Assembly: GCF_963506605.1 (NCBI RefSeq)
Contig: NC_083277.1
Span: 6,386,001 to 6,450,000, forward strand
From: Zootoca vivipara
Taxonomy: Eukaryota
Direction of reading: 5' to 3'
DNA: 64,000 nucleotides
Positions 2,927 through 64,000 of the stretch are shown piece after piece (positions within the stretch are counted from its first letter, which is position 1; every line of letters starts with the position of its first letter). The notes beneath the pieces are model-generated. The model did no database searches and had not been told where the DNA came from. It saw only the letters and a program-made list of their open reading frames with translations. Made by a program: the position numbers and the translations under genes.

Positions 2927-3044
2927 GGTCTGGTGATCTTTGAGGCAGCAGCTGTGTGTTTCCCTGAGGAGGAGCGGGCGTTGCTGGATCCAGGCCACAG
3001 AGCCTTGTGCAAGGAAGTCATGGAGGAGAACGTAGCTTCTCTAG
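2927..3044 (+). pseudogene. ZNF gene 1: degenerate KRAB-A exon (GLVIFEAAAVCFPEEERALLDPGHRALCKEVMEENVASL)
   Basis: ttttag| acceptor and |gtaag donor; 118 nt, 9 nt short of the usual 127-nt KRAB-A exon; conserved W replaced by R. Confidence 0.85.
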
Positions 3045-3395
3045 GTAAGAACAGCTGCTTGTGGGCTTTTTCAGAGCCACCATCTGGTTGGGCTCTGTGA
3101 AAGCCAGCAAGGGTTTTCATACGCCCCTAAGCCAAATTATGGACTAGCCATCTCTAATGGCTGCTAGTCATCATGGCTATGTTCTGTCTCCAGTGTCTGA
3201 GGCAGTGTGCTTCTGAATACCTGGGAATCACGATTGGGGAGAATGCAGTTGTTCTGCCAAGTGAAGGAGATAACGAGGCTTTCAAGTTTTATTATTGTTT
3301 TTTGTTTTAAAAAGGGCCATCTAAGGTATCTAACTGTTGGAGATGCAATAGGGATAATGCTTCTCTAAAACATATGTTTTTTCATTGTCCTATAT

Positions 3396-3542
3396 CAGGC
3401 ATCCCCAAGCTTTGGCCCTCCAGATGTTTTGGACTACAATTCCCATCATCCCTGACCACTGGTCCTGTTAGCTAGGGATCATGGTTGTAGGCCATTGGTT
3501 GTAGGCCAAAACATCTGGAGGGCCGCAGTTTGGGGGTGCCTG
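3396..3542. mobile_element. hAT MITE (CAGGCATCCCCAA TIR family)
   Basis: TIRs and 8-bp TSD tcctatat. Confidence 0.9.
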
Positions 3543-3776: not shown

Positions 3777-4868
3777 CAACTGGGCGGGGCAGCGAGGATT
3801 ATGGAGAGCGAGTTGGGGTGTCCTTGGAACCAGTCAATAATGAAGTGGAAGAAGAGACCTTTGGGGATCAAGAAATGTGGAGGCAGGGTGGACACCAAGT
3901 AGACGTCTGTGAAATCTCTGTCCAAAGAGCGCACACAGAGGAGAAACCCCTTCAGTCGCAGCGCAAACCTCATCTCTCATCAGATAATCCACATGGGAGA
4001 GAGAAAAGTTAAAGGTCAGGAGTTTGGAAAGGACTTTAGTCAAAGCAAACACCAAGCTTCACACCAGACAATTCATGGGAGAGAGAAAAATCATAAATGC
4101 CTGGAATGTGGGAAGAGCTTCAGTCGAAGCACAAACCTTACTAAACATCTAAGAACTCACACAGGGGAGAAACCGTTTAAATGCCTGGAGTGTGGGAAGC
4201 ACTTTAGTCAGAGCTCAAACCTGATTTCCCATCAAATAATTCACACCGGGGAAAAGCCCTATCAGTGTTTGGAGTGTGGCAAGGCCTTCAGTCACAACAC
4301 AAACCTTACCAAGCACGGGAGAATCCACACGGGGAAGAAGCCTTTCAAATGCCTGGAGTGCGGCAAGAGCTTCAGTCAAAGCTCAGACCTCATTTCCCAT
4401 CAGAGAATACACACGGGCGAAAAGCCATTTAAATGCCTGGAGTGTGGGATGTGTTTCAGTCAGAGCACGGCCCTTACGAAACATGACAAAATCCACACGG
4501 GAGAGAAGCCCTACGAATGTCTGGAGTGCGGAAAGAGCTTCAGCTGGAGAAAAAACCTTACTTCACATCAAAAAATCCACACAAAGGAGAGGCCGTACAA
4601 ATGCCCAGAGTGTGGGAAAAGCTTCAGTCAGAGCACAAACCTTATTAAGCATGAGAGGATCCACACAGGGGAGAAACCCTATAAATGCCTGGAGTGCGGC
4701 AAGACCTTTACTGTGAGCACGAGCCTTACTTCACATCAGAGAATCCACAGAGAGGGGATGCCGTATAAATGCCCCAAGTGTGGCAAGAGCTTCAGTAGGG
4801 GCCATAGCTGCCAAGTTTTCCCTTTTCCCGCGAGGAAGCCTATTCAGCATAAGGGAAAATCCCTTTAA
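3777..4868 (+). pseudogene. ZNF gene 1: C2H2 finger exon (8 intact fingers), frameshifted near 3950 and interrupted by a MITE at 4803
   Basis: Phase-1 acceptor ctgcag|3777 reads ATGRGSEDYGE...EEKP and stops at 4010-4012; the finger array is in another frame (ORF 3909-4868); further decayed fingers to about 5220. Confidence 0.8.
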
Positions 4869-4892
4869 AAAAGGGATAACTTGGCAGCTATG
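4803..4892. mobile_element. 90-bp hAT MITE inserted in a zinc finger
   Basis: TIR catagctgccaagtt/aacttggcagctatg; 8-bp TSD gtaggggc. Confidence 0.92.
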
Positions 4893-5328
4893 GTAGGGGC
4901 ACAAACCTTGAGAAGCACAAAAGAATTCACGCTGGAGAGAAATGCTTAAATGTCTGGGGTGTGGAAAGAGCTTCCGTTGAAGCGGAGACCTTCCTTCCCA
5001 TCAAAGAATTCACCCAGGAGATATGCTGTTTAAATGTCTGGAGTGCGGAATGAGCTCGTCAGAGAACCATCTTTACTAAATGTGACAGAATAGTAAATTT
5101 AGGAAGCATTTTAATGCCTGGAATGTGGGGAAAGCTTCGGGTCAAGCACAATGCAGGCTAATGATCTTAGAAACCTGGATTGCGGTTGGAGTTTCAGTCA
5201 GGGCCCATCCCTTAAATTTCCATCAAAATGTTCATTGCATTGAATTTTCAAAAAAAAAAAGTGTCTATTTTATTTATTCGGGGTGCCAAGGGGGAGTGCA
5301 AGGGTATCATGGAGAGAAAACAATAGAT

Positions 5329-5464
5329 CAGGCATCCCCAAACTGCGGCCCTCCAGATGCTTTGGCCTACAACTCTCATGATCCCTAGCTAACAGGACCA
5401 GTGGTCAGGGATGATGGGAATTGTAGTCCAACACATCTGGAGGGCCGAAGTTTGGGGGTGCCTG
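5329..5464. mobile_element. hAT MITE (CAGGCATCCCCAA family)
   Basis: TIRs; 8-bp TSD caatagat. Confidence 0.9.
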
Positions 5465-30178: not shown

Positions 30179-30706
30179 TATATTGCACAGGTCCAATTCG
30201 AGTTGCCATTAAAAAGTCATCTTTCCCTTTGCCATTTGGGGTGAGAGGAGATCCTCAGCCCCACCCCCGCTGAAACATCATTGCACAGGCCCCAGAATAA
30301 GCATGCTCCCCACCAGTAGGTGCTTCCACGCAGGGCATTGAGGAGGCATCCTGGTAGCCAAAGGAGACATGTACTTAGTTGTGTATGTGCAATTTAAATT
30401 TGTACTGTTCTAAATATGTACAAAGCAACCTTGCTGGGGGATGTGGATGAGGTTAACCCTTTCTCTCCCTACCAAGGTCCCAGTTCAAATATTTGAAGCT
30501 GCTGCTAGTATTTCAAGATCCCCTTGACTTCAACTCCCTCCTCCCAGCCATCCCAGGAGTCCTCAGGCTTCCCCTTGGCTGCTTCTAACGTAATTAACAC
30601 AACCAATTAATGCCATGCCTACTTTGGACCTGAGAAGAAAAGAAAAAAACCTCCCAGGAAGAATCCACAGCTATTTCTCCCTCCTCAAGATCCAGGGATC
30701 TCCTAC

Positions 30707-31174
30707 CTTGTATTCTTCGAAAGCCTCCTCCAGAGGAATCACCTTGTGATTTTCATGTTCCTTTGATCTGTCACAAACCACACAGATGGGGGCTTTGTGG
30801 ACTTTGCAAAAGAGTTTCAGGGGCTCCAGGTGTTTCTCGCAGACTCTTCCTTTCCCTCCATCTCCCTCTCCCTCTTCGCACATTCTCCCTTTCCCCCCTC
30901 CTTCTTCTCTCCCCTCTTGAAGGCTGAGATTCTGGGCTATTTCTACCATATTAGCCAGTTGCCTGTTGGGGATGAGACCCCTTCTCTGAACTGTTTTTCT
31001 GCATTGAGGGCAGGAAGCCTCTGCCTCCGATTCCCCCAAGTACTGGATCAGGCAGGATCGGCAGAAGTTGTGCCCACACTTTGCGATGGTCACTGGATCC
31101 TTGAAATAATCCAGGCAGATGGAGCATGTGACTTCATCACGGAGACGCTGGATGTGACCCCCTGCAGCAGCCAT
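30707..31174 (-). CDS. TRIM-A exon 1: RING + B-box2 (TRIM27/RFP- or TRIM39-like E3 ligase; whole protein about 505 aa)
   Basis: CSICLDYF..CGHNFCRSC..CPQC RING; CEKHLEPLKLFC..CVVC..H..H B-box; AAG|gtagg donor. Confidence 0.95.
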
Positions 31175-36464: not shown

Positions 36465-36982
36465 TCAGGAGATACTGAGGTGGGTTTTATCTCTCCAGAG
36501 ATGAAAGAAAGGGAGGAGGGTCTCTCCAGAGAACGAGGCTCCTGAGAACGTGTAGAGTTCGGCTCCTGAGTCAGCGTCATAAAAAGACACACGTCCCCCT
36601 TCATAGTCCAGAGTCACCCGGATCCTCCTGGGCTTCTCCCTCAGGGACAGAGGAGACGAATCAGGGGAGGTGAAGGCCCAGTAAATGCCTTCCCACTTCC
36701 CCACAGCCCAGATCCCCACCTCAGGACTGAAGTAGAAGCTGCCCTTTCTCTCCACAGACTTTCTGGCGACCCCCACAGCCCACCCTTCCCCACTTCCCAC
36801 ATTGACTTCCCAGAAATGTCTGCCTGCTGTGAATCCCTCACGTCCCAACAAACAAGAAAAGATGTTGAATCTCTCAGGATTATCAGGCAGGGTTTGAGGT
36901 CTGTCTCCCAATCTCAGGCTTTTCCGATTCTCCGACAGGATGAGCCAGGGATGGGCTGTGTCTGGATCCAGAGTGACATTTG
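36465..36982 (-). CDS. TRIM-B terminal exon: PRY/SPRY (B30.2)
   Basis: Open 518-nt paralogue of 19786-20303. Confidence 0.9.
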
Positions 36983-41109: not shown

Positions 41110-41247
41110 CAGTGGTTCTCAACCTGTGGGTCCCCAGATATTGTTGGACTACAATTTCCACAATCCCTGACTGCTGGTCCTTCCCACTAGGGATGATGGG
41201 AGTTGTAGTCCAACAACATCTGGGGACCCACAGGTTGAGAGCCACTG
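41110..41247. mobile_element. hAT MITE (CAGTGGTTCTCAACC TIR)
   Basis: TIRs; 8-bp TSD ccctatag. Confidence 0.9.
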
Positions 41248-54935: not shown

Positions 54936-55709
54936 CACACACACACACACACACCAAAGGTTCAAATCACAAAGCAGCCTATTTTCAGCAGTGATTGGCC
55001 TGTATACAGCTGTATACAGCTATTATCCATTTCCCCCATTCTATCTCTTTCTCTCTCCTCCTCCTTGAGTGTGCATATATATATAATATATATAATCATA
55101 GTATCATAGAGTTGGAAGAAACCTCAAAGCTCATCTAGTCCAACCCCCTGCAATGCAATATGAGCTAAGGCAATCTCATGGATGGATAAAAAATGTGGAT
55201 AACGGACTAATATGCAGTTGTAAATATTGATATTAGGACCCATGGAGGGGATGGGGGGGGGAAGTCCTGAGATTCAGAGTAATCTCTTTACATGGATTTT
55301 TTAAATATAATTGATTTTAAGTTTATAATTTCTAAAATCAAATGATTTTTTTCTCTAAAAAACAAAACAAAAAGGAAAAGAGGAGAATTAGGATAGCTAT
55401 CTTCTAATAAAGGTTGTCACATGGAAGATGGAGCGAGCTTGTGTTCTCCTGCTCTGGAAGGTAGGACTCGAACACATGGCTCCAAGTTACAAGAAAGGAG
55501 ATTCCGGCTAAGCATCCGGAAGAACTGATGGACAACAAAGGGCATGGCCTGAGAAGGGTCCTGAGGGCCAGAGAGAGGCCTGCATTTGGCCCCTGTGCCT
55601 GGGGCTCCCCACCCTTGGTCTCCACCCTTTTTAAGGTGTGACACTCAGACATTTGCGCCACAACCGCCTTTTTTGGGGGGGGGGAAATCCCAGGATGCGG
55701 TACTCTCAC

Positions 55710-56504
55710 CTGCCCTCCCGCTTTCTCCGCCTCCTGGTGCCTCAGGAGGAATTCCTCTGCCAGGGCCACGGCCTGGACGCAGCTCTCTGAGCCTCGTTCC
55801 TTCACCCAGCTCCCCATTTCCGAGGGCAGGACAGCCAGGAACTGCTCCAGGATCACCAGGTCCAGGATCTGCTCCTTGGTGTGCTTCTCTGGCCTCAGCC
55901 ACTGATGGCAAAGCTCCCTCAGGAGGCCGTAGACCTTGCGAGGGCCCTGGGCGTCATGGTAGCATTGCTTCCTGAAGAGCTGGCGATGGGCCTCTGAGCT
56001 GGCAGAGTCCTCCATCTTTATCGCTTGTCCGATATCGCCAGTGGCACCCGCCCTCCCATCAGCTTGCTGGGCTGCTCTGTTTAAAGGAAGGACCCCATCC
56101 TGGCTCTGTTCTTGAGTCCCCTGGCTGACGGCCTCTGCCCTCTCACGGTGGGACAGGGTGTTCTTGTCTTCACCCCACGGCACGGCTTCTGGCAGCTGTG
56201 GGTCGCCCTCGCCAGTGTGAGGGGTCTGCACTGCCTTCAGGAATTCCTGCCACTGGGCTTCCCAGCGGAGCGACGACAGGCCCTCATCTGGCTCCTGCTT
56301 AATGCGCTGCAGCTCTTCCCAGCGTTTGGGGACCCCGATGGCCGCTGGCTGAGAGTCTGGTGAGCTGTCTCCTGCCCCTGTTGCCTCTTTGAGGCCCAGA
56401 AGCTCCTCTGGCTCCATCTTCATCTCTGGGTCCCTGCTTTCATCCGGAATGGCCTGCAGCTGGAGAGTCAGGGTAGGGGAGCTGTCCACTTGCTCCACCG
56501 CCAT
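55710..56504 (-). CDS. ZNF gene 3 first coding exon: SCAN domain (ZSCAN/ZKSCAN-like; about 602 aa total)
   Basis: HRQLFRKQCYHDAQGPRKVYGLLRELCHQWLRPEKHTKEQILDLVILEQFL; ATG at 56504; CAG|gtgag donor; acceptor at 56629. Confidence 0.92.
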
Positions 56505-56719
56505 CCCGCCTCCCAGGCTTAGCCCGAAGCCTCTTGCCCCCGTCCCGCAACCCCGCTGGAAACCAGAGCTGCTGTCTTGACGCAAAAGGGGGCTCAAAAG
56601 GGCTCCTTCAGAGATGCCTCATCTCCGGCCTGCAGAAAGGTCATTCAGAAGCAGGTGGCCTTCCTGGGTGGACGACAAACCACTCACCCTGAAGGGAAAG
56701 AGGCAAACAGCCGTGAGAG

Positions 56720-57327: not shown

Positions 57328-58189
57328 CAAATGGCCTTGAGGAAGGATGTGCACAGAACTGAGTGATTCTGAGGAATGGCTTTCTCTTTGGGGCACACAA
57401 AATGAAAGGCTGGCAACATTTCACTGGAGAGCCAGGGTGGCATAATGGCAATCTGTATCCTCTCCATCAGCAGGTTGCAGGTTTGATCCCTGTAAGGGAC
57501 AATGGCATATTCTTGCATTGCAAGGGGTGCAGACCCTCCAAGTCTCCCTATTTTCCAGGGACATCCCTGATTTAGAGAATCCGTCCCCGTTTCTGGATTT
57601 GATCCCGGAATGGCCCACTCTTTATTAGGACACTCCTATTTTCATTGGAGAAACATTGGAGGGTATGGAGCTATTCGACCCCTGAGCCATCTGAAGGCGA
57701 TCCTGTATAGGGAAGTATTTTTTTTTAAAAAAATGTTTTAATGTTTTATTATGTTGCTATGTATGTTGGAAGCTGTCCAGAGTAGCTGGGGCAACCCAGT
57801 CAGATGTGTGGGGTATAAATAGTAAAATTATCATTATGGAATGATTTTAATAGAAGAAATGTTGGAGGGGATGTGGGATGGGACTAGGTGAGGCTCATGG
57901 TCCCTTCCAACTCTAGGATTCTATAATTCTTTTGAACATGCCCCCCTCTCCCAAGAAAGACCCGGCCCCTCCTCTCCCCCCACCAGCAAACCGACTTTTA
58001 AATGCACTTTTCACGCACTCTAGCAACAGCCACTGACCTGCCTGCAGCTTCTGGCAAACAGCATTCAAAAGCCGCTTTTGCAGAAACATTTGATGGGGAG
58101 GGGGGACGCAAGGCAGGAAGTTGCTCCCACTGTTGACATCCCCCTGTTCCCCCATTTCCTGCCTCTCTAAGAATCCAGCCTTTCAAACC

Positions 58190-59050
58190 CCCGCCGCCGC
58201 TTGGCTCTCTACGGGTTAAAGGGAGCGGCGCGCGCTTCCTAGAGAGGCAGGGGAAAGACGAGCGGCGAGCTTTCCTTCCTGGTTCAATCAGCGAACGGAG
58301 GGAGCAGCTGAGGTCAAAGCGGGAGAGGTGTCTATTCAAGGCGATTTGTCTACCTCTCCCACAGGTTGCGCAGCGACTGCAGAGGCATATGATAAGCCTT
58401 CCTGATTAGTATCTACATTTATATAAACTACCGGTATATATAGGTTTATATGTATAGTTATACATACGAATGTACATATACGTATGTACACACACACAAA
58501 AAATATTTTATATATATCCAAATACATACAATTTTTTTAAAGTATAAATTCCATATATAAAAATATGTACAATTTTAAAATATAAATTCCATTCATTTTA
58601 CAAGCTCTCCATCCACGATACTCCCCCAACAGAGGGTAGGAAATGCACTGCGACATTTCCTTGCTGGTTGCATGCGCAATGTGGCTTCATATAGCCATTA
58701 TCCAGCATTCCTTTTTCGGCCGGATTATTTCAAAGCAGATGTGGGGAGGGGGGGGAGACAGAACCTTCGAATCCCTCCTGCTTTATTTAAGGCCCCCCCT
58801 CCCTTCTACTCCCACTCCTGCCTATTTCCACTCCCGCTTGCCCCGCACATGGACGACCCTTAGCCGCTGCCGTTGGGAACCCGGAAGTGCCTGGACCCAC
58901 CAAGCGACTCTTCCCTCCCCCCCATCAACCCCCAAGCCTCCCGAATTGTTGTTGGGGAGGCGCTGAGGGTGAGTCTTAGGAGGGTGAGGTGGGGAGATTG
59001 CAGCAGCTCGGGGCGGCCTCCAGGCGGGCAGAAGGGGGGCGAGGAAGGGG
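58190..59050. promoter_or_regulatory. Probable bidirectional CpG-rich promoter between ZNF gene 3 (-) and KRAB gene 4 (+)
   Basis: CpG-rich patches; ccggaagtg (ETS/GABPA) near 58881; tgcatgcgca (NRF1-like) near 58669; + strand donor gagg|gtgagt near 58968. Confidence 0.6.
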
Positions 59051-59667
59051 TGAAAGGGACCCCCCTTTTAACCCCCCGCCCCAGCCCCCTTCTCACCAGC
59101 CCAGCTGGGGAAAATCCTTCCCACCACCATGCAAGCAATTTCCTCCCCCCCTTCTCTTTTTTGAAACCACGTAGTCTCTGGGCAACGCAGTCAGATGGCC
59201 ATGGTGCAAATAATAACATTATTACTGTCATCAATCAATCAATTCCACAGGAGTAGGTGTGCTCAGCTCCTCCTACTGCTCCAGACCAGGAATGGGAATC
59301 TTGTGGTTCCCCCTATATTGCATGGCTTAGGGCAGATCCTGCCTGTGCATTGAAACACCCATGAAATAACACACATTTTCGAAGGGCCCGGCTTCTCTGC
59401 AAGGATCCCTGGCTGGGGGAACTGTAGTTTTCCAAGCAGGCACCTTGCAAGGTCCACCGGGCTATGAGCTTCGTGGGCGACTGGGAATTTATTTTGTTTT
59501 TAACCTTACCGCTTTGTGGTGGAACTAAGGTGGGGGGAAAGGTGGGAAAGGACAAAGATCTTCCAACCATACTTGTCTCTCTCGCACCCCACAACCCGTC
59601 CCCACAGGTTGTGGAAGAAGCTCAGTGACCCCTTCCAGGCGGCCTCCTCTTTGTGAAAAGAGAAGAA

Positions 59668-59676
59668 ATGGCTCAG
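59668..59676 (+). CDS. KRAB gene 4 start (MAQ) at the end of exon 59608-59676
   Basis: cccacag| acceptor; gaaATGGCTCAG|gtaggt phase-0 donor in good Kozak context. Confidence 0.7.
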
Positions 59677-60029
59677 GTAGGTGAGGGAGGGGCTGCCCTT
59701 GGGGAGCCTCAAGTACTCTATTTATGATTTATGCTGTGTTTGGGATGTTCTATTATGTTATTTTTATCTTTATTCTGTATGATGCTTTGGGATTCATTAG
59801 AATGAAAAGTTTGGGTTCCTCTTTTGTTATGGGGTCTATCTTTGCTTTTTCTACATCCAAAGCTCCCTTTAAGTAGGCCCCGAGCTTTGGCTCTTGTACA
59901 ATATTTCCAAAATTTCCAAAATTTTCTTTACTTGCATGGTGGGTGAAGCAGGCAGATTGACACCCATTTCCTTAGGATTATTTGTGAGGAGTGAAGAGTG
60001 GCTGGGGAAACTTAGCCAGATGGGCAGGG

Positions 60030-60078
<49 letters not shown>

Positions 60079-60083
60079 TTCAG

Positions 60084-60210
60084 GCTCTGGTGTCCTTTGA
60101 GGAGGTGGCCATGCATTTCACGAAGGAGGAGTGGGAACTCCTCAACCCATGGCAGAAGGCTCTGTACAAGGAAATCATGCTGGACAATTATAGGAATGTG
60201 ACCTCCCTGG
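60084..60210 (+). CDS. KRAB gene 4: canonical KRAB-A exon
   Basis: ALVSFEEVAMHFTKEEWELLNPWQKALYKEIMLDNYRNVTSL; 127 nt; ttttcag| and |gtaagg. Confidence 0.95.
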
Positions 60211-60864
60211 GTAAGGACCTCTCTACCCTTTGGTTTGTAAGACACTGAAGAGATGAGATTTCTCACTCTTCATTGCTGGACTCACAATTTATTTTGGTGA
60301 ATAGCACACCTGCCATGCAAAATGTTACATTAAAAATAGCATTAAATATATAAATACAAACAGGTACAGTCGTACTTTGGAGTTCGAACAGAATCTGTTC
60401 CGGAAGTCCTTCCAACTTCCGAAATGTTTGACAACCAAAGTGCGGCTTCTGATTGGCTGCAGGAAGCTCCTGCAGCCAATCGGAAGCCATGGAAGCCACA
60501 TTGGACGTTCAGCTTCCAAGTTTTTCAATCGTTCGGGAGCCAGAACGTTGGACTCCCAAGCCATTCGGGAGCTGAGGTACGACTGTATAGTGTTGAAATT
60601 TCAACAGCAGGGATCATTCAGTATTGTCATTCCGGGTGAATTATGTCCTCTCTGGTCCATCGTCCCTAAAGAGAGCTCAACAGCTCTGGTCTCTCCCCCT
60701 AAAAAAAGCTCAACAACTCTGGTACATTTTCCCTAAAAAGATGACAATGGACAATGACAATGGGTAGATCGCAGTCTGCTGAGAGTTGGATGTGTCTGAT
60801 CTATGCTGTAGAGTTCTCTTCATATCCATACTGCCTTATGTCGAGTCAGACCATTGGTTTATCT

Positions 60865-61000
60865 CAGGCACCCCCAAACTTGGCCCTCCAGATGTTTTGG
60901 GACTACAATTCCCATTATCCCTGACCACTGGTCCTGTTAGCTAGGGATGATGGGAGTTGTAGTCCCAAAACATCTGGCGGGCCGAGTTTGGGGGTGCCTG
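60865..61000. mobile_element. hAT MITE (CAGGCACCCCCAA family)
   Basis: 8-bp TSD gtttatct. Confidence 0.9.
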
Positions 61001-61255
61001 GTTTATCTAGCTCAGTGTTCAGCCGGGGATTAAACCTGGGACCGTCTGCTCGTGGGGCCAGTGCTCCCACACTGAGCAATGGCCCTTACCCAAAAATCTG
61101 AACTGGGCAATAGGCATGTTGGCACCCAAGTACGGGGTGGGGGGGGAGAGAGAGACCTCCTCCTCTTGCCAAGAACAGGTTGTGGGAGACGAAAATGGGG
61201 ATGTTTCAGAAGGAAATGTGTTTGTAATTAGGCCTGCTTTTCCTTTCTCCCTAAG

Positions 61256-61348
61256 AAGGAGGAGACCCTCTCATGCCCAGGCCAGACCTCATCCGCTGGC
61301 TCGAAGAACTGGTTATACTGCCCTGCATGGAAGGATGCTCAGCAGCAG
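61256..61348 (+). CDS. KRAB gene 4: KRAB-B exon
   Basis: GDPLMPRPDLIRWLEE; phase 1-1; |gtaatt donor. Confidence 0.85.
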
Positions 61349-62406
61349 GTAATTGCGAATGTGCTCCTCCTTGCCTGGGAATTGGAGGTTTCCTGCAGTG
61401 TTGTCTGGTGCCCGTTGAGACTGGCAGGGCAGCATGGAGGGGGACCCAGCGGTGAGTGAAGTGAGAGCCAATGATGGGCAGAGCCACTCCCTTGCTGTTT
61501 GTAAGGGAGAAGGCAGGCAGGCTGAGGTTCATGGGACATTGACCCTTTCACCCTAATGGACCAGCTGCCATGGTTATCTTGTGGACTTCCGAAAATATTT
61601 TGGCAAAACCCCTTGCCCAGAGGCGCTTCTGTAGACCTTGTACTCTTGGGGCAGGAGAACAAATCTTCTTGTTCTCCAGGGAGTAGAAGAAAATGAGCAG
61701 CTCTCACAATGACAGGGAGGAAGGAGGAAAGGATAAGTGAAGAACCTGTGGCCCTCCAGTCGTAGCTGGCCAAATGATCAAGGATGATGTGAGCTGGGAA
61801 TTTAGCAACTTCTGGAGGGACATAGTTCCTCACACCTGAGTTAAGGTCCTCCCTGGACAGGTGATTTTTGAACTGGTTCCCTGATAATACAGTAATGCCT
61901 CGGTTTAAGTACGCTTCAGTTTGAGTACCTTCAGTTTAAGTACTCCGCGGACCCGTCTAGAACGGATTAATCCACTTTCCATTACTTTCAATGGGAAAGT
62001 TCGCTTCAGTTTAAGTATGCTTCAGTTTAAGTACAGACTTCCGGAACCAATTGTGTGCTTAAAACGAGGTACCACTGTAGTGTGTTTGTTTTTTGTAGAC
62101 TTCTGCCACCTTCAGCTCTCTTCCTTTCTGGAAGTTTGGTTTGTTCTTGCAGAAAATCACAGAATTTTTGGTTCCACCAATCCCCGACAGTTCCTGCTAA
62201 CCAATATTCCACCCTTGAATAGCTAAGTTAAAACAACACCTTAGTAAATATCAGCCCGGTTTATTTAATGTATGGCAGGATCTGCCTCCTCACTGAATAT
62301 TTGCATGGGTGATGTCTTTGCTATCTTCTCCACAGCTGTGAATTTGGTTGGTTCCTTCTCCTTAGAGACTCAGTTCTTCACACGCTTCCTTCCTTTTTGA
62401 TTCCAG

Positions 62407-62630
62407 GAAGTAAAGATCCAGAGATTAAAAGTGAAGTAGATTCTGACTGCCCCTTGAGTCCCCTGAAAATCTGCTTTGGAGAGTTGGGGGAAGCCCCGGA
62501 ACCGATTTGCAAGGTCAAGAGAGAGGAGGAACCTTCCATTATGCAGGCAGAAAACCGTCCACCAACAGAACAGCTTTGTTCGATACAGCCCAAAGTGTCA
62601 GCAAAAGGAGCCAAGCATCCCAAGCTGGAA
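62407..62630 (+). CDS. KRAB gene 4: linker exon (5' part of the former finger exon, ending at an internal GAA|gtaagt donor; unspliced form stops at 62663)
   Basis: ttccag| acceptor, phase 1; open; decayed finger remnants follow at about 62655-62835. Confidence 0.78.
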
Positions 62631-62869
62631 GTAAGTTATAAGTTGATTGAAAAGTGTCATTGATATGATAGGAGGAGCTTTCCTGATAAATTGGCTCTTA
62701 TTGTACATGAAAGCATCCAGAGAGAGGAGAAACTATTTTAATGTTTGGACTGGGAAGGTTATAGCGCAAACCTTTATTGCACATTGAAGAATTCACATAG
62801 AGAAGCCGCTTGAAGAGATGTGTGGAGACTTTCTGATCCTTTAAGCTTCATTCACTTTTGTGTTGTTTG

Positions 62870-63410
62870 TATTTTCACGTTCATATCAAATGTAGGAGCC
62901 TCTATAATTGACTATATTATGGTGTCATACAACCTTTTGAATAGACCTCTTGAGTGCAAAGTGGAGGAGCGGGTCGATAGCGACCGCTTACCGCTCTGTC
63001 TCCTCCTCGATGCAAGAAAGGATCTATTTTGCACTGACAAACTTGAATTCCCCAGGACCACCAATATGAAGTTGAGGTTCTCACGCATCAGGTGGTCCGA
63101 TGAACTGGACGAGGAAGTATCTTGAAGGTTACGCCCAGATATATTCCTTACTAGGAGAGACAACCTCTTAAACTCCTCATGCCCTGAAACTAGAATAAAC
63201 TTGTTTCAGGATCTGATTTCACTTTTTCAACCCTATTTGACCCCCCAAAAAAGGCAACGCGGCATCTGTTATACTTCAACAAATCTAAATCCTGGTTTGA
63301 TCAGGAATGCCTTGCTATGAAGTGCTTTCTGTTTGGAAAAGACAGGAATTATAGATCTGCGAATCTACCCTTACTCCCTGCAGAGTGGTTTGAAGCTAAA
63401 TGAAATTATA
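62870..63410 (+). mobile_element. Degenerate LINE fragment (APE endonuclease C-terminus)
   Basis: GASIIDYIMVS..VDSDRLPL (SDH-like) motif. Confidence 0.65.
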
Positions 63411-63490
63411 AAGCTAAAGCTTTGGTTGTATTTTCTTTTTCTATAAAATGAATAGAAATTATTATTATAAAAAACTTAGTTGGTCTATAA

Positions 63491-63654
63491 CAGTGGTGTC
63501 CAAACTTTTTTCAAAGAAGGCCAGATTTGATGAAGCGAAGGGGGCCGTTGAGCTTTTCTTAGGATTTTGCCCCAGGAAATAAACTGCCACAGGGGCTAGA
63601 TTAAACCGACCGGTGGGCCGAATTAGGCCCCTGAAACGACTTTGGACATGCCTG
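63491..63654. mobile_element. hAT MITE inserted in a Penelope-like remnant (about 63470-63757)
   Basis: 8-bp TSD gtctataa; flanks aaaacttagttggtc..ggtg and cagaccaacacggctac match 7440-7520. Confidence 0.8.
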
Positions 63655-63675
63655 GTCTATAAGGTGTTTCTGGAC

Positions 63676-63723
<48 letters not shown>

Positions 63724-63832
63724 GACTGCATCAGACCAACACGGCTACGTACCTGAATTTGCAGTGTGATCAGCTTGAGAAGGGACAGTCTGGTACGATA
63801 ATTCGTTCTTTCCTCTCTAAATTGTTTTTCAG

Positions 63833-64000
63833 ACCTGTAGCAGAGGATCTTCCTGCAACAGCACGAAGGCGAACAGCGTGGAAGCCCTGCTGCGAGATCC
63901 CTTTCCTGAGCGCAGTTTGGCTGAGCAGTGCCGTATTAAAGATCTCGGTCCCGACTGCCCTGACCTGTGCATTGTGCAAACCGTGCTGGAGAAAGGCAAG
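63833..64000 (+). CDS. KRAB gene 4: hAT-transposase-like (ZMYM1-like/TTF-type) exon, runs off the window
   Basis: Long pyrimidine tract + tttttcag|; phase-0 frame open for 56 codons: TCSRGSSCNSTKANSVEALLRDPFPERSLAEQCRIKDLGPDCPDLCIVQTVLEKGK. Confidence 0.72.

What the first reader, a model, noticed from the sequence alone, without database searches (positions are those of the whole stretch)
59668..64000. Candidate KRAB-hAT transposase fusion gene that swapped its zinc-finger array for a captured transposase
Seen in sequence: a fully phase-compatible open exon chain, MAQ (59668-59676) > canonical KRAB-A (60084-60210) > KRAB-B (61256-61348) > linker (62407-62630) > exon from 63833, open to the window end. 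The linker is the 5' part of an ancestral finger exon. Decayed finger remnants with stops and frameshifts follow it (about 62655-62835, e.g. gagaaactattttaatgt, agaattcacatagagaagccg), and a consensus GAA|GTAAGT donor just before them would skip them in phase 0. The 63833 exon has a long pyrimidine tract and reads ...TKANSVEALLRDPFPERSLAEQCRIKDLGPDCPDLCIVQTVLEKGK. From memory (no search run), this matches the N-terminal NSV-x-L-x-PF-x-R-x-K-x-LGP-x-P-x-L-x-I-x-Q segment just before the TTF-type zinc finger of ZMYM1-like hAT transposases; ACG AAG GCG AAC may be the eroded transposase start codon. The ORF track misses it because there is no stop in the window. Established: KRAB-transposase fusions formed by splicing are a recurrent source of tetrapod transcription factors (Cosby et al. 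2021). Inference: a lineage-specific repressor that recruits TRIM28 to hAT TIRs or MITEs. This KRAB-A is the only canonical one in the window. I cannot tell whether this particular fusion is already catalogued.
Basis: partly seen in the sequence, partly recalled or inferred. Interest (0 to 1): 0.92.

Follow-up and report, generated by a model that had tools for sequence, protein, structure and literature searches.

The report
Lizard KRAB gene fused to hAT transposases
The stretch holds the first five exons of a real, already annotated lizard gene that joins a KRAB repressor domain to DNA-binding parts of two different hAT transposons; this kind of gene is known, but I found no paper or list that describes this one.

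Summary
The five-exon chain (59668-59676, 60084-60210, 61256-61348, 62407-62630, 63833 onward) has canonical splice sites and compatible phases. Its translation equals residues 1-207 of an annotated 739-aa NCBI protein of this locus (P0013).

That protein has a KRAB-A/B domain and a disordered linker. Next comes the TTF-type zinc-finger module of a ZMYM1-like hAT transposase. That module stops after about 145 residues and is spliced to a second, unrelated BED-type (Ac/Hermes-like) hAT.

Podarcis species share this architecture at 87% identity and also keep a hAT dimerisation domain. The worm lizard Rhineura has the same KRAB, linker and junction, but joined to the full first transposase. The fusion therefore predates the lacertid-amphisbaenian split, and lacertids captured the second hAT later.

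In this species the protein ends before the dimerisation domain, and the second catalytic Asp is Val. It cannot be a transposase.

RNA data show the splice pattern, but the reads differ from the window by 2-5%, so expression of this exact copy is not shown.

The gene is absent from Table S3 of the 2020 preprint of Cosby et al. It is a new member of a known kind. TRIM28 recruitment and the DNA targets are untested.

The parts
59668..59676 (+). Coding part of exon 1 (Met-Ala-Gln) with a GTAGGT donor. The upstream in-frame V-K-R-E-E matches the Podarcis N-terminus.
   Evidence: Low + strand RNA depth at 59401-59800.
60084..60210 (+). Exon 2: KRAB-A box, 127 nt, ends in phase 1.
   Evidence: Pfam KRAB E 5e-22. 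Splice 60209/60210 to 61255/61256 seen in 6 reads of X15 and one contig of X3. AF2 pLDDT about 70-83.
61256..61348 (+). Exon 3: KRAB-B-like box, 93 nt.
   Evidence: Translation. phmmer alignments of the Podarcis orthologue to the solved ZNF93 and ZNF568 KRAB domains run through this exon. X3 contig record 4 joins it to exons 2 and 4.
62407..62630 (+). Exon 4: acidic linker, 224 nt, the 5' part of the former finger exon. It ends at the GAA|GTAAGT donor in phase 0.
   Evidence: Homologous linker in Rhineura P0002. Predicted disordered.
62671..62733 (+). Decayed C2H2 zinc-finger unit 1, now intronic, with stops.
   Evidence: nhmmer E 8e-4 over the whole window. Frames.
62753..62811 (+). Decayed C2H2 zinc-finger unit 2, frameshifted relative to unit 1.
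   Evidence: nhmmer E 5e-4 over the whole window.
63833..64000 (+). Start of exon 5. Twelve codons lie upstream of the old transposase start, then the N-terminus of a ZMYM1-like, TTF-type hAT transposase. The exon runs on past the window end.
   Evidence: X3 contig record 7 matches from exactly 63833, after 17 letters that do not match the intron. AF2 pLDDT above 90 from residue 160.
63869..63871 (+). GCG codon at the position of the transposase's original ATG.
   Evidence: Alignment with stand-alone copies that begin M-N-S/T-V. Met is kept in Rhineura, Sceloporus and Phrynosoma and is Val in Podarcis.

Best explanation
This is the 5' half of a host-transposase fusion gene of lacertid lizards.

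Shown:
- A KRAB zinc-finger gene lost its finger array. Two decayed fingers remain in what is now an intron.
- A donor inside the old finger exon splices the KRAB-A, KRAB-B and linker exons to an acceptor 36 nt upstream of the former start codon of a ZMYM1-like hAT transposase.
- This fusion already existed in the common ancestor of lacertids and the amphisbaenian Rhineura.
- In lacertids the first transposase was cut down to its N-terminal TTF zinc-finger module.
- That module was then spliced to the start of a second, BED-type Ac-like hAT.
- In this species the protein is KRAB, TTF finger, BED finger and a partial RNase H-like core. It cannot cut DNA: the second catalytic Asp is Val, and the part carrying the catalytic Glu and the dimerisation domain is missing.

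Inferred:
- The two transposon-derived zinc-finger modules bind DNA, probably motifs like the ends or subterminal repeats of the two hAT families.
- The KRAB domain brings TRIM28/KAP1 and silences chromatin there. This would resemble KRABINER and ordinary KRAB zinc-finger proteins.
For: Gene model:
- The exon chain is phase-compatible with canonical splice sites.
- It is identical to residues 1-207 of annotated protein P0013.

Domains:
- KRAB by Pfam and by phmmer matches to the solved ZNF93 and ZNF568 KRAB domains.
- The TTF-region C-x2-C...H-x5-H pattern is conserved across 30 homologues. It is predicted as a compact domain with pLDDT 91-97 at residues 160-284.
- BED finger: Pfam 30.5 bits against a cut-off of 20.6.
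- hAT core: Hermes by sequence E 2.6e-15 and by fold E 3.5e-14.

Conservation:
- The Podarcis muralis and P. lilfordi models have the same architecture. P. raffonei has a shorter model through the TTF exon.
- P0013 is 87% identical to the Podarcis muralis protein over residues 1-310, 80-94% per region, with no gap over 739 residues.
- The Rhineura protein shares KRAB, linker and junction; homology stops at residue 308.
- In the TTF-region tree the window, Podarcis and Rhineura form one clade with 98/97 support.

Other support:
- Decayed fingers lie next to the donor.
- Spliced RNA for exons 2-3-4 and an exon-5 contig starting at the acceptor.
- If the observed 11% amino-acid divergence were neutral, an open 739-codon frame has a chance of about 0.01-0.03, before counting indels.
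Against: - No read or contig shown to me spans 62630 to 63833 or the junction from exon 5 to the BED exon. RNA depth was very low, with only 6% of each run read.
- All reads over the exons differ from the window by 2-5%. They may come from a paralogue or a divergent haplotype, so expression of this copy is not shown.
- Conservation is nearly flat along the protein: linkers 80-85%, domains 89-94%. Constraint may therefore be weak.
- In this species the C-terminal third present in Podarcis is missing and one catalytic Asp is lost. That could also be the start of decay.
- Podarcis also has isoform models without KRAB-A.
- TRIM28 binding, DNA binding and repression were not tested.
- The downstream DNA could not be read.
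Confidence: 0.72

Rival explanations
1. The copy in this window is a decaying, possibly silent duplicate or allele. The transcripts seen would come from a closely related copy, and this one is drifting toward a pseudogene.
For: - Every read or contig over exons 1, 2, 4 and 5 differs from the window by 2-5%. Most listed differences are nonsynonymous: KRAB-A 4 of 5, linker 5 of 6, exon 5 2 of 3 (my codon reading).
- At five sites the RNA variant carries the Podarcis residue and the window the derived one.
- The protein lacks the C-terminal 214 residues kept in Podarcis and has Val for the second catalytic Asp.
Against: - Two independently deposited versions of this species' protein (P0001, P0013; 2 differences in 739) both keep the full open frame.
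- There is no stop or gap against Podarcis over 739 residues.
- All four zinc-finger ligand sets and the KRAB box are intact.
- The 90%-identity cluster holds no third protein from this species.
- One X3 contig at 59230-59420 matches this locus at 99.5%.
Confidence: 0.17
2. The fusion is an artefact of gene prediction. The real product would be a KRAB-only protein ending at the stop near 62663, and the transposon-derived open frames downstream would be separate relics chained on by the annotation pipeline.
For: - Read-through past 62630 reaches a stop after 11 codons.
- No junction read for 62630^63833 was listed.
- The P. raffonei model ends right after the TTF exon.
- The gene is absent from the Cosby et al. 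list, which required RNA support for every junction.
Against: - The same junction is modelled in Podarcis muralis, P. lilfordi and P. raffonei and in Rhineura, with homologous residues on both sides.
- Exon 5 has no start codon of its own, and its frame opens only 12 nt before the acceptor.
- An RNA-derived contig begins 17 nt before 63833 with letters that do not match the intron.
- The open frame is kept across species.
Confidence: 0.08
3. The downstream frame belongs to a recently inserted, still autonomous hAT element that merely lies next to a dead KRAB zinc-finger gene.
For: Related ZMYM1-like elements are widespread and often intact in vertebrates.
Against: - The start codon is gone, GCG in its place.
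- Homology to that family ends after about 145 residues.
- The nearest relative of the TTF module is the Rhineura fusion protein, not any stand-alone copy.
- No other copy of exon 5 exists in the window.
Confidence: 0.03

Closest known systems
KHATD2 (Anolis carolinensis LOC100558310), Cosby et al. Table S3
   Same: KRAB fused by splicing to a TTF-type hAT transposase in a squamate.
   Different: - KHATD2 is listed as Anolis-only, under 150 My old, and keeps DUF4371 and Dimer_Tnp_hAT.
- Here only the TTF module of that hAT type survives, and a second BED-type hAT follows.
- No Anolis KRAB protein appeared among the hits to the TTF module. Its sequence was not compared directly.
ZNF862 (mammals)
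   Same: KRAB plus a hAT-derived C-terminal part, formed by splicing.
   Different: It is a mammalian gene from a different capture event. It was not among the 120 best relatives of the Rhineura transposase part and was not compared directly.
KHATD1 (turtles)
   Same: KRAB fused to a BED-type hAT with Dimer_Tnp_hAT.
   Different: It is turtle-specific, with two KRAB and two BED domains and no TTF module.
KRABINER (vespertilionid bats)
   Same: A KRAB-transposase fusion made by splicing. It is the experimental model for how such a protein binds transposon ends and regulates genes.
   Different: The transposase is mariner, not hAT, and the gene is much younger. Function has been tested there and not here.
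ZBED1, the name RefSeq gives the Podarcis orthologue ('E3 SUMO-protein ligase ZBED1-like')
   Same: A BED finger followed by a hAT RNase H-like core and, in Podarcis, a dimerisation domain.
   Different: - The nearest relatives of this half are lacertid paralogues at 69-71% identity. They include a stand-alone 682-aa protein and NOP9 fusion models, not ZBED1 itself.
- ZBED1 has no KRAB domain and no TTF module.
- The name reflects a best hit, not orthology.
Rhineura floridana LOC133381407 (XP_061476477.1, 'uncharacterized protein')
   Same: Same KRAB-A/B (71% identity), homologous linker, same junction and same TTF module. It is sister to the lacertid genes in the tree.
   Different: It keeps the whole first transposase (DUF4371 and C-terminus, 1100 aa) and has no BED-hAT half.

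Membership tests
KRAB domain proteins (Pfam PF01352) | KRAB-A box above the curated score | tested here: met
   77.6 bits against a cut-off of 20.4, E 5e-22, on window:60084-60209.
KRAB domain proteins (Pfam PF01352) | KRAB-B box following KRAB-A | tested here: met
   phmmer alignments of the orthologue P0015 to the solved ZNF93 and ZNF568 KRAB domains (E 6e-8, 9e-8) run through the exon-3 residues. There is no separate profile for the B box.
KRAB domain proteins (Pfam PF01352) | Binding of TRIM28/KAP1 and repression | not testable with these tools
The EEW and MLD/E motifs are present by eye.
Host-transposase fusion genes (criteria of Cosby et al.) | Transposase-derived domain fused in frame to a host domain in an annotated gene | tested here: met
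   P0013 = KRAB + TTF module + BED + hAT core. It is identical to the window exons.
Host-transposase fusion genes (criteria of Cosby et al.) | RNA support for every exon junction | tested here: inconclusive
   Junctions 2-3 and 3-4 were seen. Junction 4-5 is only implied by a contig that starts at the acceptor. The junction from exon 5 to the BED exon lies outside the window. The reads differ from the window by 2-5%.
Host-transposase fusion genes (criteria of Cosby et al.) | Purifying selection on the transposase part (dN/dS below 1) | not testable with these tools
   No orthologous coding DNA could be fetched. Proxies are an open frame with no gaps over 739 residues and a neutral-drift simulation giving P of about 0.01-0.03.
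hAT transposases, ZMYM1-like / TTF-type | N-terminal TTF-type zinc finger homologous to that of the family | tested here: met
   HMMER hits to proteins that UniProt names 'TTF-type domain-containing'. The C-x2-C...H-x5-H pattern is kept. The fold is confident. No TTF profile was in the local Pfam copy.
hAT transposases, ZMYM1-like / TTF-type | DUF4371 core and C-terminal dimerisation region | tested here: not met
   Homology with Rhineura P0002 ends at residue 308. Pfam finds no DUF4371 in P0013 or P0001.
hAT transposases, Ac/Hermes-like with BED finger | BED zinc finger | tested here: met
   Pfam zf-BED 30.5 bits against a cut-off of 20.6, residues 331-381. Also matches the ZBED1 BED structure 2ct5.
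hAT transposases, Ac/Hermes-like with BED finger | RNase H-like catalytic core with the D, D, E triad | tested here: not met
   The fold and sequence match Hermes. In this species the second Asp is Val (TVNSAN against TDNGAN in Podarcis), and the protein ends before the Glu.
hAT transposases, Ac/Hermes-like with BED finger | C-terminal hAT dimerisation domain | tested here: not met
   Absent from P0013 and P0001, which end at 739. Present in Podarcis P0015 (PF05699).
C2H2 KRAB zinc-finger proteins | Intact C2H2 finger array in the last exon | tested here: not met
   Only two decayed units with stops and a frameshift remain at 62671-62811.

The most novel reading that the evidence does not exclude
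A KRAB repressor was built by two successive captures of unrelated hAT transposons. The first came before lacertids and amphisbaenians split, the second in lacertids. The result would be one protein with two transposon-derived DNA-binding modules (TTF and BED), kept by selection to silence both hAT families or their MITEs. One candidate target is the abundant element with 8-bp target duplications that sits in the gene's own intron 2.
Probability: 0.3. Interest if true: 0.6.

Novelty: new member of a known kind. Interest (0 to 1): 0.45.

Why it matters
KRAB-transposase fusions are a documented route to new vertebrate transcription factors. This one is missing from Table S3 of the 2020 preprint of the reference catalogue, and databases name it misleadingly 'ZBED1-like' or 'uncharacterized'.

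It offers a dated three-step series in living species:
1. Stand-alone transposon copies.
2. KRAB plus a whole transposase in Rhineura.
3. KRAB plus a trimmed DNA-binding module plus a second transposase in lacertids, with further loss of the catalytic part in this species.

The series shows how a captured transposase is reduced to its DNA-binding module and how capture can happen twice at one locus. It would be a useful case for studying which parts of a transposase the host keeps.

Tried and rejected
Steps that failed or were unavailable:
The end of exon 5, the BED exon and the reason for the stop at residue 739 are known only from database proteins.
- Pfam on exons 3, 4 and 5 alone gave nothing. 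The local Pfam copy has no TTF model.
- tblastn of intact finger proteins against 62631-62900 was no better than shuffles (18 bits against a shuffle maximum of 22). Only the DNA profile worked.
- Searches of the scan's earlier findings by sequence and for 'TTF' were blank.
- Pfam on the other open frames in the stretch (61342-61833 on the - strand, 60377-60733, 61921-62223, 62820-63122) found no family.

Ideas rejected:
- I first thought the iguanian TTF-hAT proteins (Anolis, Sceloporus, Phrynosoma) were orthologues of an old domesticated gene to which KRAB was later added. The tree rejects this. They group with a second Rhineura protein without KRAB, apart from the KRAB-fusion clade.
- The Hemicordylus SCAN-KRAB-TTF-hAT protein and two frog KRAB-TTF-hAT proteins are separate events.

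Exons were searched one by one by reference. They were concatenated only inside a local script, for the drift simulation.


Full report
**What is in the sequence**

The stretch reads as the first-stage reader described. ATG GCT CAG at 59668-59676 is followed by a GT donor. Four further open pieces follow:

| Exon | Coordinates | Length |
|---|---|---|
| 2 | 60084-60210 | 127 nt |
| 3 | 61256-61348 | 93 nt |
| 4 | 62407-62630 | 224 nt |
| 5 | 63833 to the window end | at least 168 nt |

- Each piece is bounded by a pyrimidine tract plus AG and by a GT donor.
- The first four pieces sum to 453 nt, or 151 codons, so the piece from 63833 is read in phase 0.
- Its frame opens only at 63821 and has no ATG. 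It can be translated only as an internal exon.
- Exon 2 is a strong KRAB-A box (Pfam 77.6 bits, E 5e-22).

**The chain is an annotated gene**

- The 56-residue exon-5 peptide was searched alone against 1.84 billion proteins. It found a 739-aa protein (P0001, 98% identity) with the match at residues 152-207, exactly where the exon chain puts it.
- Its cluster mate P0013 lies on a 123.6-Mb record in NCBI and UniRef. It is identical to the window over all five pieces.
- The tool hides its name because the window encodes it.
- P0001 and P0013 differ at 2 of 739 residues. Two independently deposited versions therefore carry the same open frame.

**Architecture of the protein**

AF2 figures are, run on a 43-sequence alignment.

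| Residues | Module | Evidence |
|---|---|---|
| 5-43 | KRAB-A, pLDDT about 70-83 | Pfam KRAB |
| 42-159 | Disordered: KRAB-B, linker and the first codons of exon 5 | AF2 pLDDT below 50 |
| 160-284 | Compact TTF zinc-finger module, pLDDT 91-97 | AF2; alignment |
| 285-312 | Disordered junction between the two transposase parts | AF2 pLDDT below 50 |
| 320-385 | BED finger | Pfam zf-BED at 331-381; AF2 |
| 430-739 | RNase H-like core | AF2; Hermes match below |

- The TTF module begins at the N-S-V-E-A-L-L motif.
- The core's best structural match is the Hermes transposase (Foldseek E 3.5e-14).
- phmmer also matches the Podarcis orthologue to Hermes at E 2.6e-15.

**Two different hAT transposons are involved**

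- Residues 165-308 are homologous to the N-terminus of ZMYM1-like hAT transposases, which UniProt labels 'TTF-type'.
- In 30 aligned homologues the C-x2-C...H-x5-H ligands are kept.
- Stand-alone copies begin M-N-S/T-V-E/D. That Met aligns with GCG at 63869-63871 in the window.
- The acceptor at 63833 therefore lies 36 nt upstream of the eroded transposase start.
- Homology to this family stops at residue 308.
- From residue 309 the protein is a BED-type, Ac-like hAT. Its own stand-alone relatives start a few residues before the point where homology begins. The second part was thus also joined at the very start of a transposase reading frame.
- A Podarcis raffonei model (P0025, 332 aa) reads through after ...Q-E-V-E-N into a short tail and a stop. 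This places an exon boundary there.

**Conservation and age**

- Models in three Podarcis species match this protein at 87% identity over residues 1-310. P. muralis and P. lilfordi share the whole architecture; the P. raffonei model ends after the TTF exon.
- Against the Podarcis muralis protein, identity is 80-94% in every region, with no gap over 739 residues.
- The full-length Podarcis proteins run on for 214 more residues, including Dimer_Tnp_hAT and the catalytic Glu.
- The amphisbaenian Rhineura floridana has a 1100-aa 'uncharacterized protein' with the same KRAB boxes (71% identity), a homologous linker and the same junction. Its first transposase is complete, with DUF4371 and the C-terminus.
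- In a maximum-likelihood tree of the TTF region, the window, Podarcis and the Rhineura fusion form a clade with 98/97 support.
- That clade is separate from one holding iguanian proteins, Hemicordylus copies and a second Rhineura protein without KRAB (92/87).
- The KRAB capture therefore predates the split of lacertids and amphisbaenians. From general knowledge this split is well over 100 million years old; I did not date it here.
- The second capture happened on the lacertid branch.
- Fusions of KRAB with this hAT type in Hemicordylus and in two frogs fall elsewhere in the tree and look independent.

**The lost finger array**

- Reading on from 62630 gives a stop after 11 codons. After that come pieces that look like finger and linker motifs, with stops and one frameshift.
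- A tblastn test was not significant.
- I then built an 84-nt DNA profile from 18 intact finger units elsewhere in the window.
- Over the whole window and both strands, the profile hits only the three real arrays plus 62671-62733 and 62753-62811 (E 8e-4 and 5e-4). The two extra hits are 82 nt apart in the same register.
- The reading that the donor arose inside a former finger exon is supported.

**State of the transposase parts in this species**

- The first catalytic Asp (T-T-D-C-W-T-S) and the C-x-x-H motif are kept.
- The second Asp is Val here, while Podarcis and all paralogues have Asp.
- The protein ends in the middle of the helical insertion domain, before the Glu and the dimerisation domain.
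- From what is known of Hermes, such a protein cannot catalyse transposition.
- In Podarcis the triad is intact by motif.

**RNA evidence**

Three RNA-seq runs of this species (6% of each read) and one set of contigs were laid on 58001-64000.

- Depth over the exons is very low.
- The KRAB-A to KRAB-B junction is seen in six reads from five starts and in a contig.
- One contig joins exons 2, 3 and 4.
- Another contig matches from exactly 63833 after 17 letters that do not fit the intron.
- No junction 62630^63833 was listed.
- All these reads differ from the window by 2-5%, and most listed differences change the amino acid. At five sites the RNA carries the residue found in Podarcis.
- The reads may come from an unannotated paralogue or a divergent haplotype. 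They show that the splice pattern is used in this species, not that this copy is expressed.

**Constraint**

No orthologous coding DNA could be fetched, so dN/dS was not computed. I ran a simulation on the 621 coding bases in the window. If the 11% amino-acid divergence from Podarcis were neutral, a 739-codon frame would stay free of stops with a probability of about 0.01-0.03, before counting indels, of which there are none. Against strong constraint, conservation is nearly flat between domains and linkers.

**Comparison with what is known**

- Cosby et al. (bioRxiv 10.1101/2020.05.07.082677) list 106 host-transposase fusions.
- Their KRAB-hAT entries are KHATD1 (turtles), ZNF862 (mammals) and KHATD2 (Anolis carolinensis, TTF type).
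- The only lacertid-specific entry is a SCAN-Tigger fusion. No entry matches this gene.
- Full-text searches found no paper on it.
- RefSeq names the Podarcis orthologue 'E3 SUMO-protein ligase ZBED1-like'. This reflects a best hit only. The closest relatives of that half are lacertid paralogues at 69-71% identity, among them NOP9 fusion models.

**Verdict**

  - Only the DNA-binding module of the first transposase remains.
  - A second hAT follows it.
  - The gene is shared across lacertids and, in older form, with Rhineura.
- It is a new member of a known kind.
- The repressor mechanism (KRAB recruits TRIM28 to sites bound by the TTF and BED modules) rests on established knowledge of KRAB proteins and hAT N-terminal fingers. 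It was not tested.

Noticed in passing
window 60865-61000 (intron 2); other copies at 5323-5464, 3383-3542, 41134-41223: A 136-bp palindromic MITE with 58-nt arms (93% complementary) starting CAGGCACCCC. It is flanked on both sides by the same 8 bp, GTTTATCT (60857-60864 and 61001-61008). An 8-bp target duplication is typical of hAT elements. The family is very abundant in the RNA runs.
   Followed up: partly
window 2930-3043 (+), upstream of the finger array at 3949-5033: A second, weaker KRAB-A box (Pfam E 5e-11, 42.5 bits) with E-E-E-R in place of E-E-W. The fusion gene's KRAB-A is therefore not the only one in the window.
   Followed up: partly
window 60113, 60143, 60144, 60173, 60185, 62450-62511, 63934-63975: All RNA reads and contigs over the exons carry differences from the window, mostly nonsynonymous. 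At 60113, 60144, 60185, 62457 and 62511 the RNA has the residue seen in Podarcis. The KRAB-B exon shows none. Whether this is a paralogue or a haplotype is unresolved.
   Followed up: partly
proteins P0044-P0046 (Podarcis raffonei and P. muralis 'nucleolar protein 9 isoforms'): Gene models that join NOP9 to a BED-hAT of the same family as the second half of this gene (69% identity). This may be another host-transposase fusion or a prediction artefact.
   Followed up: no
proteins P0068 (Hemicordylus capensis), P0100 (Discoglossus pictus), P0112 (Leptobrachium leishanense): Further annotated fusions of KRAB (plus SCAN in Hemicordylus) with full ZMYM1-like hAT transposases. They fall apart from the lacertid clade in the tree, so they look like independent captures.
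   Followed up: partly
window 63470-63755 and 61895-62060: Two dispersed repeats inside introns 3 and 4 draw hundreds of RNA reads, with loose ends at their borders. The first ends in a long ATT microsatellite. The second gives many 'goes back' joints, as other copies with internal tandem units would.
   Followed up: no
window 62820-63125 (+): A 101-codon open frame in intron 4. By eye it resembles the end of a LINE endonuclease (D-Y-I-M-V-S...S-D-R-L-P-L). Pfam gives no significant match.
   Followed up: partly
window 14172-15119 (-), 55404-56597 (-), 19786-20232 (-), 36465-36911 (-), 30671-31174 (-): By eye, from the translations only, these open frames look like SCAN-domain exons (the first two), B30.2/SPRY-like exons (the next two) and a TRIM RING/B-box exon (the last). 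If so, the fusion gene sits in a mixed zinc-finger and TRIM cluster, head to head with a SCAN gene. No domain search was run on them.
   Followed up: no
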